In this document: positions 9,068-25,650 of the stretch, in pieces
Numbering within the stretch: position 1 is the first letter of the stretch
Layout of the letters: each line of letters opens with the position of its first letter
Assembly: GCF_048593235.1 (NCBI RefSeq)
Contig: NC_133620.1
Span: 373,641,261-373,705,260 of the forward strand
DNA: 64,000 nucleotides
DNA from: Sminthopsis crassicaudata
Taxonomy: Eukaryota
Direction: 5' to 3'
Program-made: the position numbers and the translations under genes
Notes under the pieces: generated by a model
Told to the model about the DNA's origin: nothing
Seen by the model: the letters and a program-made list of their open reading frames with translations, nothing else
The model's database searches: none

Positions 9068-14402
<5,335 letters not shown>

Positions 14403-20096: not shown

Positions 20097-23048
20097 CTTC
20101 TAGTTCATACTTTGGCTTAATGCTTTTCTAATGCCAGTATGACTTATGTAAAATATCCATATACACTGTATCTTTTTGAGATCATATATTCCAGATATCA
20201 AGGATTATGCCATTATAAAAAGCTCTATTACCATCTAAAATTAAGAGCTTATTAAATTTTTAAAAATGCAATTGATTATGATATTATTGGAGATAAAGAA
20301 ATAGAAAAAGGACAAGGAGAAAATTTGTATCCTCTTGTTTCTTCCATTTCCCAAGTGCCCCCCAAATCCTGGGTGTGTCTGTTGTGTAAGAAGGATGGAA
20401 ACTCAGGCCTTCCTTCCTTCCCTGCCCTGCTTACTTCTTATTGTCTGGATCCTTTTCATTGATCTTCTCCAGAACATTGATTTCCAGTCGTGCTGCCTCT
20501 TTGTACTTTTCCACATTCTTAATGATCTTTAGGGCAACCCGAGCTCCACCCCTGCAGGATGGCAGGAGAAACTGTTGGTGGGTACTCAAGAACACTCCAG
20601 AATCTATGAGATTGTCTAAGATATTTAGAAATGAGCAAAGTGTGCCCTAGATATGCTCCATCCCTCTATTTCTGTGGTTATCGGGGGGGGGGGGAGGGGA
20701 GAAACGGACGACAATAAGGGTTAAGAAAGAAGGGTTAGTTCATACCTTCGATGATCCACACACTGTACAACACGGCCAAAGGTCCCCTCTCCTAGAGTGC
20801 TCACAATCTCATCTGAAATGGTACAGAATGGGATTGGGGGAAGAGGGAAGGAGAGAAAAGGTAGGGTAAGTTTAATTGGTAGAAGATGAGCATATTGACC
20901 TGGGGGTAGGAGATGACAGAAAGGGGAGACAGATAAGTCATGGGAGGAGACCCCTGACTGATTCCCACCACCTAAACCCCAGGGTCAGAAGAACTGGAAG
21001 TGGGCTATAGGGATCAATTTATAATAACAACTCAAACCACCCATATGACAAACATCACAGAGAAGAGACAGAAGAGGCAGTGACTTGGGTTGGCATAGGG
21101 GAGATTAAGATGTTTATAGGACCATTACAAGCTATAGGATTGTTACGATTTGGCTTGTACATCGCTCTTGTAGCCAGTCCCCGACGTGGTAGATGAGGTG
21201 ACCCTCAGCGTCGTCCTCCACACTCTTGGCTCTCCGGCTGCTGTGCTGCTGTCAGGGGGCGGTGGGGGGTAGGAGCGAGCCAGGTGTCGGAGCGGGGGCC
21301 GAAGGGAGGCGGGGTGAATGGTAGAGGGGCCACCGGTCACAGGCGCCCAGCCAAGGGGGACAGACGATGATGGGGGACAGCGGAAGGTAATACGTCAGAT
21401 GTAATAAGGTGGATTGGGGACAGAAGAGAGAGCGACGTATAATCCCAGGTCCCCAAATCCAAAGTGGGGTCAGAGGAGGGATGGGGCAGAGCAAAGAAGT
21501 GGTTTAGTTGCTATAGTCACCACAGTCCCATGACAGACAACAATATCTCCTCCATGGGGCAAGAGTTACCCTACCCCCCACCAGTTACCACCACAGAGAT
21601 GGGTACAGAGCCCAGAGGGAGAGAGGCATATCCCAAGCAAAGCCTCAGTTTAAAATTAACTATTATTACTAGATAATAAAAAGTAATCAAAGCATTTAGA
21701 ACAGAGCTGATCATCCTAAGAACAGCAGGTATAATACACCAAGTAGGGCACTTAGTAAGCATAAAGGCATAGTGTTTACATAATCCAAGTTCTAATGTCC
21801 TGGTGTCCTTTAAGAGCCAGAGAGGTTCAGAAGAAGAGAACTGGACTAGTGCCCACCACAGTATTCACACCCCATAGCATAGATGAGAACAGGTCATTTC
21901 CTACTTACCCAGAATCCTAAGAGTCTTGAAGAATGGGGAGAGAAGAGATGATGTTGAGTACTCACCGAAGATGAATGGCTGAATGTCCGGCTATGTCGTC
22001 TTCGCCGCCTGTGTTTCCTACGGCTACTGCGCTGACTACGGTAGCTGTCATCCCGATGATACTCATAGGAATGTCGATACTCAGCTTCATAGTAAGGTTC
22101 CCCTCGCTCTCGGCTGTAGTCACGCCTGTAGCTGCCACAGTATCGTCGGTCATAAGCCCGCCTGTCAGAAGAGTGCTCATCATAGCTGAAAGGACAGAAA
22201 AAAGTCCTAAAGATTAAACCTTTTTGATTTAGGAAAAGCTTCTTTCCCATTCTTGTACAATTAGACGTTCTGCCATACCATATGACATCAAACAAACTCA
22301 TTCTCTTTCTCTTCTCCAGTTTCTATTAGATTAGGGAAAAAAAGAAGCTCTACTAGGAAATAGCTATCTTCTCCTAGTCATCTCAAGAGCCCAAGCCCTG
22401 AGAGAGTGAGATAATATAGCCAAAGAAAACAGCCCCACATATATAAATATCACACAACTTCTCAAAAAACAGCATAAAACAAAACCAATTTGATCTCTTT
22501 TCATCCCCTTCTTTACGAGGCATTGACCTCTTTTTAGAGACTTTTCCTGAACTCCACTCATCATCCACAATGCCAGCACTCTCACTGACCGATCTTATAT
22601 CTTACTAACCTTTGGTCACTTTATGTGTGTGTTCTGCTTCGCTGACCAGACTAATATATTGTGAACAAGAAGCTCAACAATTTCATTTTCTAATGTTCTT
22701 TATTATTATCGACTCCTATCTTACCTTCCAGATCTCTATTTAGAATGGGTATTTGTAAATATTGTTGATATTATAACAGTTGCAAAGTTTACAAAGTTAT
22801 AGCAATTTTGCAATCATGCATTTCTGTGGACGTGTCTTTCCCTACACCGAGTTCCCTAATGACTTCCTAGCTCCTCACCTCCTAGAACGGACATGATAGC
22901 TGTCTTCTCGCCGGCGCCGCCGAGTCCGGTCACTGCTGCTGGACCAAGAACGGCTTCTCCTACGCTTATGTTTTCGACTTCGGTAGTGTTCATGGTAGCT
23001 GCCCCGGCTGCCCCGCTCTGAAGAACGGTATCTTCGGGGGTGAGGCAT
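15557..23048 (-). CDS. CLK2: CDC-like kinase 2 (LAMMER dual-specificity SR-protein kinase), 497 aa from the canonical ATG
   Basis: 12 coding exons: 23048-22879, 22185-21966, 21248-21161, 20812-20746, 20551-20435, 19242-19076, 18210-18116, 17305-17176, 17071-16989, 16797-16718, 16273-16183, 15742-15557 (1494 nt). RS-rich N-terminus, [41 protein letters not shown]. Confidence 0.98.
20055..20089. repeat. (CA)n microsatellite preceded by tgcgcg
   Basis: About 17 CA units in a CLK2 intron. Confidence 0.9.
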
Positions 23049-25260
23049 CTGAGAGAAGAGGAGGAGACAAGTGAGGGAGGCAGGGCTTCATGATCAACCT
23101 TGATCTTTATATCTCTCCTACAAAGACCTGTGGTGTTGAATCATCAACTTCTTATATGACCTTCTTTATCAACTACAACATATTCCTGCCTTTGTGCATC
23201 TCACTCCATCCTACCAGTGATACCCTTTCCTCCTTTCCAATCTAGCTCAAAATTACAAGATTTTCATAAATAATCCTATCTGAATTATTATTTTACCTTG
23301 ACTTTTCCTTAGCATTATATGCTTTCATTGTTGAAACACATATAAAATATGGTCTTTTGGGTCTATTATCCTTGCTTTTACTCTCACTTTTCTTTATCCC
23401 TGGAATGATATCCTTAGATCCTTCTACTGTTCCATTCACTATTACAATTCTAGGGATCGAAGTCCCAGAACTGTAAGGTATCTTAACCGGAGTGGTTTCC
23501 CCATCTATCTACTGAAATTCTATCATATAAAGCCAACTTAAAACATTTCCTTCTTCATGAATTTTTCCTCAGTCATTCCCAACTTAACACTTTGAAGTTT
23601 TGCATACACATGTTACCTTGTAATAACTGTTTGTGTCCTCTTCCCTTCTTTGACTATATTTTTCACAAAAGCAAGAAAAGTATCTTTATTCCTCTCCATG
23701 CATCTACCACAATGATTTACACATAATAGATGCTTATATGGTTCATCTTTGGATGGAATACAAGACAGAACAGATCTGTGTTAAGCTATTTTTGCTTATG
23801 GAATATATAGCAAGTCTTCAAAGTATATTGCTTATATGATCTAATGCCACTTTGTGTTCACACTATTTCTTCAATTAGCCTGTCAGTATATCAAAGACAA
23901 GAATCTTAATTTTATATCTAATCCCCTTTGCCAATACTCTACTAATACCCTAGAGCCTTAGCAGGCCAGGTAACTATACAAAATGAATATCAAATAGCAA
24001 TTCACTATTAGAGTTCTAGGGATCTGAGTCCCAGAACTGTAAGGTGGTATAATTGGAGTGGTCCTCCCCACCCCCAAGCTCCCTTAGAATGTTTTCTTCA
24101 GAAAGCCTCTAGCTGGAATCCGCTTTCCAATACTGTTCCCCTCTCATATTCAGAAGGTACAAAGAATGGCTGGTTTTTAAATTGATATCAGCACTTTGCT
24201 AAGATTGACTACTCTCCAACTGCTGTGGAGGAGGAAGAACACTAATCCTTTTTCTCCTTTTTCCCCACAAGTGTGGGACACTTTCTGAGGGAAACAGTAA
24301 TCACAGGTGAGGGAGATTGGAGGGTGTATGTTTGTATGCACAAACAAGGAAAAGGGAAGGGTTTCAGGAGCAGAGGATTCCATGTGTTAAGAGTTCCATT
24401 ACACTACTCAGACATTTGGGTCGAATTCCGAGTCTCTTCCTCACTCCCAACTCCGAAGTGAGGAGACAGATGTTGGGCTAGACTCTCGGTCCATACGCTA
24501 AGACAATAATTTCTCAAGATACTAGTTACCTCTTCCTCACCTGTAAATTAAGAATATTTACCTTATTTCTTAAAGTTATAGCTAATAAACTGAGCCAATG
24601 TCCTCACAGCATGCTTTTGTAATCTTAAACCTGTACAAATCTTACATTTCCCAAGCATTGAAAATGCTCTTCCATTTCAACCTAGTTCTAGAACCTCACC
24701 CGCACTTAGAGGTTTCCTACGGAGCATCTTCCTTTAAGCTACTAAGGAAACCTCCCACACCGCCAATTTCTCCGTCTCTCCTCCTCCCTCCTCCATTTGC
24801 TCCAGCAACCACATTCCAAGACTGCACTCTGTTATCATAAACTTCTAGGGAAACCTCTTGTACGACAAACTTATAAGTCTCTTTTTTCCTAGTTGCTCAA
24901 CCAATCAAGGTCCAAGAAGATACCAGCAGCCTGTGGTCTGGGAACCCCAGCCTAACTCCTCCTAACGTGTTCGGTTCACGAAGCTCCTCGACATACCTCG
25001 GTCCCCGAGCCCTAGTCACTTCGGACCCTTCCCGTACCTTCCGGCTTCTCACAGGACAGGGCCCCCTCACAAAGCTTTCCTTTTCTCGATACCACTGCCT
25101 CCTTCAACAACTAGCAAGGGCCCCTCGCCCTCTCGCACGGCCGCGACCCCAGGCCCCCTTTGGGGCCGGCACTCTCAGTCTCCGGTCCTCCCCGCGGCGC
25201 GCGCCCCCGCGCCCGCCATCTTGCCGCGCGCCCCCGTGGCCCGCCAGGCCGCGCGCTCAC

Positions 25261-25650
25261 CGTTCTGGCTGCGAGGCCCGTGCGCTTGTCCCACAGGAAG
25301 TCCGTGATGGCGGCGGCGCTGCGGCCGGAGACCGGCCCCCCACCCCCCGCGGCGACGGTCTGCGGCTCCTCCCTCCCGCCCGCCCCACGCAACCTGGGGC
25401 CTCGGACCCACCGAACCCGGCCCCGGGCCCCGCTGCGCTCGGTTCCGCTTGCGCCCGGCCCTCTCCCGCCCCCCGGGATCTATCGCCTCCACGCCGCCCG
25501 CAGCTCGCCTCCCACCCCGGGCCTGGCCCCGGCCACGGCTCCGGCTCCGGCCCCCGGCCCCGGCTCCGGCTCCGGCCGCTCCACTCCGCCGCCGCCGCCG
25601 CCGCCGCCGCGAGCGAGCACGCACGCACGTCCTGCGTCCCTTCCCAGCTC
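25261..25650 (-). other. CLK2: CLK2 exon 1 (5' leader) inside a CpG island spanning about 25100-26050
   Basis: Donor AGAACG|GTGAGC at 25261; the next exon begins directly with ATG at 23048; no AUG in the leader. The 5' end (TSS) is approximate. Confidence 0.8.
25586..25609 (-). repeat. (CGG)8 trinucleotide repeat in the CLK2 5' leader
   Basis: (ccg)8 on +, flanked by ccggct/ccggcc hexamer repeats. Confidence 0.85.

What the first reader, a model, noticed from the sequence alone, without database searches (positions are those of the whole stretch)
25261..25392. Candidate UUG-initiated 44-aa N-terminal extension of CLK2
Seen: exon 1 splices in phase 0 directly onto the ATG. Its last 132 nt are open in the CLK2 frame, starting at a TTG (25392) with A at -3 (aggTTGc): (M)RGAGGREEPQTVAAGGGGPVSGRSAAAITDFLWDKRTGLAART-MPHPRR. 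The nearest in-frame stop is about 90 nt further upstream, and the leader contains no AUG. The last 16 codons (ITDFLWDKRTGLAART) look protein-like rather than GC-repeat-like, and from memory this stretch is nearly identical in the human leader. Inference: a near-cognate-initiated proteoform with altered localisation or regulation, sensitive to initiation stringency (eIF1/eIF5). It may already be reported for human; I could not check.
Basis: partly seen in the sequence, partly recalled or inferred. Interest (0 to 1): 0.7.

Follow-up and report, generated by a model that had tools for sequence, protein, structure and literature searches.

The report
Known ACG-started CLK2 extension, marsupial copy

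Summary
The open frame itself carries no information. The region is about 80% G+C, the other two frames stay open longer, and 66% of composition-matched shuffles give at least 44 open codons.

The start is probably not the UUG. An in-frame ACG at 25305-25303 sits in a perfect NAT1 motif (GCCGCCRNNXXXG), the only one in the window, 15 codons before the donor. Human CLK2 has a published ACG-initiated extension, supported by initiation-site mapping, N-terminal proteomics and ribosome footprints, and reported as conserved in mouse and rat.

Against one deeply diverged relative (L001, species unknown), a 69-base block from 12 bases before the ACG to 12 bases into intron 1 is 68/69 identical. The 75 bases specific to the UUG reading carry indels of 11 and 5 bases, and the two UUGs do not align.

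The verdict is an orthologue of a known proteoform in what earlier notes call a marsupial genome. The UUG and the 44-residue length are not supported. Read evidence could not be obtained.

The parts
25390..25392 (-). It is present but not supported as an initiation site.
   Evidence: Searches show the codon with its context GGCCCCAGG|TTG|CG. It has 3 mismatches to the NAT1 motif. It lies in a gap of the L001 alignment. L001's own in-frame TTG is 38, not 44, codons from the donor.
25318..25392 (-). The 25 codons specific to the UUG reading. This is a G+C-rich leader and its frame is not conserved.
   Evidence: Aligned columns are 80% identical to L001 but carry gaps of 11 and 5 bases. Neither protein hit extends over this part.
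25302..25314 (-). Perfect NAT1 motif (GCCGCC-R-NN-ACG-G, with A at +5) around the ACG.
   Evidence: One search finds one match in the window against 0.01 expected. One search shows it is the only near-cognate codon in exon 1 with 0 mismatches. The motif is defined in PMC13754004. It is identical in L001.
25303..25305 (-). ACG, the most likely start of the extended CLK2 proteoform.
   Evidence: It is in frame, 15 codons before the donor. It is orthologous in position and context to the ACG start reported for human CLK2.
25261..25305 (-). The 15-codon N-terminal extension (the ACG plus 14 codons), ending at the exon 1 donor.
   Evidence: 44 of 45 bases are identical to L001, and the one change is a synonymous third position, GCA to GCC. 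The peptide is 100% and 96% identical in the two database hits over the conserved stretch.
25249..25260 (-). 5' splice site of intron 1 and the next bases; the 3' end of the 69-base conserved block (25317-25249).
   Evidence: GTGAGC follows the exon. 12 of 12 bases are identical to L001.
25480..25482 (-). Nearest upstream in-frame stop (TAG).
22879..23048 (-). CLK2 exon 2 (170 nt), beginning with the annotated AUG at 23048-23046 directly after the acceptor AG.

Best explanation
Exon 1 of CLK2 in this genome carries the orthologue of the published ACG-initiated N-terminal extension of CLK2.

Inferred mechanism: scanning ribosomes meet an ACG at 25305-25303 inside a complete NAT1 motif (GCCGCC at -9 to -4, A at -3, G at +4, A at +5). 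That motif raises near-cognate initiation to a level comparable with AUG in mammalian cells. A share of ribosomes start there, mostly with Met. They read 14 more codons to the end of exon 1 and continue in phase across the splice into the annotated AUG codon. This gives CLK2 with 15 extra N-terminal residues. Ribosomes that scan past the ACG start at the annotated AUG, which has A at -3 and C at +4. The ratio of the two forms should depend on start-codon stringency factors (eIF1, eIF5, 5MP).

Shown here: the ACG, its motif, the frame, the splice consensus, and strong conservation of exactly this block in one distant relative.

Taken from papers on human, mouse and rat: that the site is translated and that the N-terminal peptide is detected.

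Inferred only: that the same happens in this species. The UUG at 25392 is an ordinary in-frame near-cognate codon in a G+C-rich leader with no support as a start.
For: - Sequence: the ACG is in frame, 15 codons from the donor. It is the only perfect NAT1 match in the 64 kb window and the only zero-mismatch near-cognate in exon 1.
- Conservation: window 25317-25249 is 68/69 identical to L001 with no indel, while the 5' flank is 63% identical against a 49% shuffled baseline and the intron is 52% against 46%. In L001 the ACG, its motif and the 15-codon distance to the donor are the same. The two database ORFs match only this part of the 73-residue query, 32% coverage at 100% and 96% identity.
- PMC8287933: for human CLK2, TISCA and N-terminal proteomics find N-terminal peptides with Met or Thr at an ACG first codon, and the Swiss-Prot AUG start was not detected.
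- bioRxiv 10.1101/2020.10.19.345736 cites Na et al. 2018 for the same CLK2 observation.
- PMC9789052 supplements: human CLK2 is in the Ribo-seq-supported set, with a 16-codon translated extension, rank 387 and proteomics count 1.
- PMC13754004: the ACG-initiated CLK2 polypeptide sits under the NAT1 motif, has footprints in human, mouse and rat, and is repressed in principle by eIF1/5MP.
Against: - There is no direct evidence from this species. The transcription start, the exon 1-exon 2 junction and translation are therefore all unverified here.
- Only one comparator sequence with DNA was available, and its species is unknown.
- Fedorova et al. give a negative PhyloCSF score (-39.7) for the 29-codon human leader across 120 mammals, so a coding-type substitution pattern is not established. 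Their Ribo-seq predictor called the neighbouring ATC, not the ACG, as the start.
- With only 1 or 2 substitutions in the block, I cannot separate protein-level from nucleotide-level constraint.
Confidence: 0.78

Rival explanations
1. One reading: initiation at the UUG at 25392 gives a 44-residue extension.
For: The codon is in frame, with A at -3, no intervening stop and no upstream AUG. L001 also has an in-frame TTG upstream of the ACG, and the net length difference between the two TTG-to-ACG intervals is 18 bases, a multiple of three.
Against: - An open frame of this length is expected by chance (P = 0.66), and it is the shortest of the three frames.
- UUG is a weak near-cognate, and this one has C at +4 and 3 mismatches to NAT1, including G-6. 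UUG contexts listed in the PMC9789052 supplement score 0.2-3.7 on a scale where the optimal AUG is 100.
- The two TTGs sit at 44 and 38 codons and are separated by two out-of-frame indels (11 and 5 bases), so the same bases are read in different frames in the two species.
- The human leader used by Fedorova et al. is 87 nt, shorter than the 132 nt needed.
- The upstream translated ORFs (O, Q) reported in the human, mouse and rat CLK2 leaders are out of frame.
Confidence: 0.05
2. The conserved block is kept for reasons at the DNA or RNA level: promoter-proximal factor sites, the initiation context itself, and the 5' splice site. The 15-residue peptide would then be a tolerated by-product with no selected function of its own, or would not be made at all in this species.
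For: - Conservation runs without a break through the donor and 12 bases into the intron, and weaker conservation continues to a YY1-like AAGATGGCGG at 25222-25213.
- Only 1 of 15 third-codon positions differs between two genomes whose flanks are near the shuffled baseline. That is more conservation than protein-level selection alone usually leaves.
- From my own knowledge of the consensus sequences, untested here: the block holds a YY1-like GCCGCCATC and an ETS-like ACTTCCTGT.
- PhyloCSF for the human leader is negative, and Fedorova et al. conclude that most Ribo-seq-supported extensions lack selection.
Against: - A perfect NAT1 motif with a near-cognate codon is reported to be depleted from human 5'UTRs by purifying selection, so keeping one in frame over this distance argues that the initiation event is wanted.
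- The peptide is detected in human cells.
- The frame is unbroken exactly from the ACG region to the donor, while indels accumulate just upstream.
- RNA folding gave no significant or shared structure.
Confidence: 0.15
3. The start is the ATC at 25308-25306, one codon upstream of the ACG, giving 16 extra codons.
For: The Trips-Viz ORF predictor called ATC for human CLK2. In the window the ATC has only one mismatch to NAT1, at +4, and it is conserved in L001.
Against: N-terminal proteomics found Met or Thr at an ACG first codon. AUC is a weaker near-cognate than ACG, and here it lacks G at +4. The 2026 paper assigns the start to the ACG.
Confidence: 0.07

Closest known systems
Human, mouse and rat CLK2 ACG-initiated N-terminal extension (Ichihara et al. 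2021, PMC8287933; Asano laboratory 2026, PMC13754004; Fedorova et al. 2022 RiboSET, PMC9789052)
   Same: Same gene and the same position, the last 15 or 16 codons of exon 1 read in phase into the annotated AUG. Same ACG under a complete NAT1 motif. The short context strings printed for human (CGCCAUCA before the start; AGAACGAUGCC at the AUG) are also present in the window.
   Different: This copy is in a different, reportedly marsupial, genome. Translation has not been measured here. I made no base-by-base comparison with human sequence, by instruction.
NAT1/EIF4G2-type GCC-rich context for near-cognate starts (NAT1 motif GCCGCCRNNXXXG)
   Same: All defined positions are matched, and +5 is not G, which is the favourable variant.
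   Different: EIF4G2 uses GUG as its only start. CLK2 keeps a downstream AUG, so two proteoforms are possible.
Conserved non-AUG extensions such as VANGL2-Long (AUA) or PTEN-L (CUG)
   Same: An upstream in-frame near-cognate codon gives a longer proteoform.
   Different: Those extensions are longer and show coding-type conservation (VANGL2 has PhyloCSF +656). The CLK2 extension is 15 codons, with a negative PhyloCSF over the human leader.

Membership tests
Near-cognate-initiated N-terminal extension of an annotated CDS | In-frame near-cognate codon upstream of the annotated AUG with no stop between them | tested here: met
   ACG 25305 and TTG 25392 both qualify. This feature alone is at chance level in 80% G+C sequence.
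Near-cognate-initiated N-terminal extension of an annotated CDS | The start codon lies inside the mature transcript (transcription start upstream of it) | not testable with these tools
No RNA run is on record. In human the leader is 87 nt, which includes the ACG but not a codon 132 nt upstream.
Near-cognate-initiated N-terminal extension of an annotated CDS | Frame and peptide conserved across species from the start codon to the AUG | tested here: met
   This holds for the ACG: there is no indel and 44 of 45 bases are identical to L001, and the peptide is identical or nearly so in two database ORFs. It does not hold for the UUG-specific 25 codons, which carry indels of 11 and 5 bases.
Near-cognate-initiated N-terminal extension of an annotated CDS | Coding-type substitution pattern (synonymous excess, positive PhyloCSF) | tested here: inconclusive
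   Only two substitutions lie in or beside the block, both synonymous in the CLK2 frame. The published human-centred PhyloCSF120 for the 29-codon leader is -39.7.
Near-cognate-initiated N-terminal extension of an annotated CDS | Ribosome footprints or initiating ribosomes at the site, and an N-terminal peptide | not testable with these tools
   These are reported for human, and footprints also for mouse and rat. There are no data for this species.
NAT1-motif-driven non-AUG start (PMC13754004) | GCCGCC at -9 to -4, purine at -3, G at +4; +5 not G is favourable | tested here: met
ACG 25305 has 0 mismatches and A at +5.
CLK2 orthologue | Kinase exons closest to CLK2 rather than CLK1, CLK3 or CLK4 | tested here: met
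   Solved CLK2 chains score 113-114 bits against at most 80 bits for the other CLKs, and 112.6 against at most 48.4 bits.

The most novel reading that the evidence does not exclude
The 69-base block (25317-25249) would be a dual-purpose, almost invariant element kept across therian mammals. It would encode the true main N-terminus of CLK2, since in human the ACG start rather than the annotated AUG is the one detected by TISCA and proteomics. At the same time it would be constrained base by base, by the initiation context, promoter-proximal factor sites and the 5' splice site. That combination would explain why codon-based tests such as PhyloCSF score it negative even though it is translated and retained. 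If so, the annotated CLK2 start is the minor one in marsupials too.
Probability: 0.3. Interest if true: 0.45.

Novelty: already known. Interest (0 to 1): 0.28.

Why it matters
CLK2 is a splicing-regulatory kinase and a drug target, and its N-terminal region controls its activity. The extension matters for annotation, because the usual start may not be the only one or even the main one. It also matters as an example of start-codon stringency control.

For this scan the value is mainly corrective. The phenomenon is published for human, mouse and rat, the start is the ACG and not the UUG, and the extension is 15 codons and not 44.

The small addition is that the perfect NAT1-ACG site and its 15 codons are retained, almost base for base, in a genome that earlier notes identify as a marsupial. 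If that identification holds, the reported conservation extends beyond placentals, and the case becomes a useful one for asking why codon-based conservation scores miss it.

Tried and rejected
So there is no evidence on the transcription start, the junction or close relatives. Later work on them was local arithmetic in scripts on files already held.
- Exon 2 peptide search, meant to catch spliced ORFs from other species: no candidate found.
- The joined exon 1 + exon 2 model was neither built nor searched. The exons were searched separately by reference.
- P0002. Its contig was withheld. It may come from people, so I did not align it or look for more of it. I use only its row.
- RNA structure. 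The pre-mRNA around the donor gave z = -1.2 (window) and -2.2 (L001), with different pairings. The exon 1 leader gave z = +1.8. There is no support for a conserved structure.
- The species of L001 could not be found: the accession occurs in no paper held.
- The supplements of PMC8287933, PMC13754004 and PMC5749180 are not held, so the exact human peptide and figure panels could not be read.
- The large representative protein search and the third word search were not used. The claim does not rest on absence of relatives, and the informative letters were barred.

Full report
**What is in the sequence**

CLK2 lies on the minus strand.
- Exon 1 ends ...AGAACG|GTGAGC at 25261.
- Exon 2 starts directly after an acceptor AG with the ATG at 23048-23046 and runs to 22879. 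The join is therefore in phase 0 onto the ATG.
- The next in-frame stop upstream is TAG 25482-25480.
- There is no ATG on this strand from 25800 to 25261.
- Two kinase exons match solved CLK2 chains far better than CLK1, CLK3 or CLK4, so the gene identity holds.

**Is the open frame more than chance?**

It is not.
- The stretch is about 0.80 G+C.
- The CLK2 frame is open for 73 codons back from the donor, while the other two frames are open for 144 and at least 179 codons.
- In 5000 composition-matched shuffles, 66% keep at least 44 open codons and 49% keep at least 73.

The absence of a stop and of an AUG therefore says nothing about coding.

**What stands out instead**

Among 27 near-cognate codons in exon 1, only one sits in a complete NAT1 motif (GCCGCC at -9 to -4, purine at -3, G at +4). 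This is the in-frame ACG at 25305-25303, with A at +5. It is the only match to GCCGCCRNNACGG in the whole window, against 0.01 expected. It lies 15 codons before the donor.

**Published work on this gene**

- PMC8287933 reports that TISCA and N-terminal proteomics identify N-terminal peptides of human CLK2 with Met (mostly) or Thr at an ACG first codon. The Swiss-Prot AUG start was not detected by either method.
- A 2020 preprint cites Na et al. 2018 for the same CLK2 observation.
- The supplements of PMC9789052 list human CLK2 (ENST00000361168.9) in the Ribo-seq-supported set. The leader is 87 nt, that is 29 in-frame codons. The translated extension covers transcript positions 40-88, that is 16 codons, with the start called at the ATC next to the ACG. 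It has rank 387 and a proteomics count of 1. PhyloCSF over the 29 codons is -39.7, and the AUG context score is 69.
- PMC13754004 (November 2026) defines the NAT1 motif and shows that eIF1 and 5MP repress such starts. [quoted passage not shown] From AlphaFold 3 models the authors propose that the extra peptide competes with a helix near the pseudosubstrate region.

The phenomenon, and its link to initiation stringency, are thus already described.

**Comparison with another genome**

A word search with the 73-residue open frame found two short unspliced ORFs that match only the last 23 or so residues, at 100% and 96% identity over 32% of the query.

One, P0001, lies on a 985-base Logan contig that was served as L001. 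The contig of the other, P0002, was withheld. I took that as possibly from people, did not align it or look for more of it, and use only its table row.

Aligning L001 with the window gives these identities:

| Window segment | Result against L001 |
|---|---|
| 25317-25306 (12 bases before the ACG) | 12/12 identical |
| 25305-25261 (15-codon extension) | 44/45 identical; the one change is a synonymous third position |
| 25260-25249 (first 12 intron bases) | 12/12 identical |
| 5' flank | 63% identical, shuffled baseline 49% |
| Intron beyond the block | 52% identical, shuffled baseline 46% |
| 25392-25318 (UUG-specific 75 bases) | 80% identical in aligned columns, with gaps of 11 and 5 bases |

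Because of those two gaps, bases shared between them are read in different frames in the two genomes. The window's TTG falls in a gap. L001 has its own in-frame TTG 38 codons from the donor, not 44. The net length difference is 18 bases, which keeps the frame overall, but that happens one time in three by chance.

In L001 the ACG, its motif and the 15-codon distance to the donor are unchanged. The species of L001 is unknown to me. Flank identity close to the baseline indicates a deep divergence.

**Which genome this is**

Earlier notes of this scan call the genome the fat-tailed dunnart, a marsupial. I did not test this. If it is right, the ACG site is conserved beyond the placentals named in the 2026 paper.

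**Mechanism**

Shown here:
- the codon, its context, the frame and the splice consensus;
- conservation confined to the block that begins 12 bases before the ACG.

Taken from papers on other species: translation from this ACG, detection of the peptide, and sensitivity of NAT1-type starts to eIF1 and 5MP.

Inferred for this species: a share of scanning ribosomes start at ACG 25305, read 14 further codons and continue across the splice into the annotated coding sequence. This gives CLK2 with 15 extra residues. The remaining ribosomes start at the AUG, whose context (A at -3, C at +4) is only moderate.

**What remains open**

With one or two substitutions I cannot tell peptide-level from base-level constraint. 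Several things point to base-level functions overlapping the coding one:
- The block runs through the splice donor.
- A YY1-like AAGATGGCGG lies 39 bases into the intron and is largely conserved.
- From my own knowledge of the consensus sequences, the block holds a YY1-like and an ETS-like motif. I did not test these.
- 14 of 15 third positions are unchanged, and the published PhyloCSF is negative.

RNA folding gave no significant or shared structure.

**Limits set by the rules**

- No read evidence exists for the transcription start, the junction or expression.
- The joined exon 1-exon 2 model was left out, and the exons were searched apart by reference.
- No comparison with human sequence was made. 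Statements about human come from the papers cited.

**Verdict**

This is the orthologue of the known ACG-initiated CLK2 extension of 15 codons, not a UUG-initiated 44-residue one.

Noticed in passing
window 25213-25222 (minus strand), intron 1: AAGATGGCGG lies 39 bases into intron 1 and is conserved in L001 apart from the last base. It resembles the YY1 consensus as I recall it. It is roughly the reverse complement of the GCCGCCATC just before the ACG.
   Followed up: partly
window 25586-25610 and 25515-25580 (minus strand): A run of eight GCG/GGC triplets is followed by GCCGGR-type hexamer repeats upstream of the in-frame stop. Most of the hexamer part is absent from L001 (a 25-base gap), so it looks lineage-specific and length-variable.
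   Followed up: no
window 25261-25263 with 23044-23048: The annotated AUG has A at -3 but C at +4. It is the same 11-base context string that the Fedorova supplement prints for human, with a score of 69, which is low among the AUG scores listed there. A modest AUG context fits a gene where an upstream start competes.
   Followed up: partly
window 12595-12891 (minus strand): An ORF with a coiled, charged stretch ([22 protein letters not shown]...) lies downstream of CLK2. From memory it looks like the N-terminal region of a SCAMP-family protein, which would fit the CLK2-SCAMP3 neighbourhood known from human. Not tested.
   Followed up: no
window 25615-25646 (minus strand) and L001 about 225-260: A second, smaller island of similarity lies between the window and L001 (TGGGAAG.GACGCAGG...GCGTGC), about 250-290 bases upstream of the donor. 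It may be core-promoter sequence.
   Followed up: no
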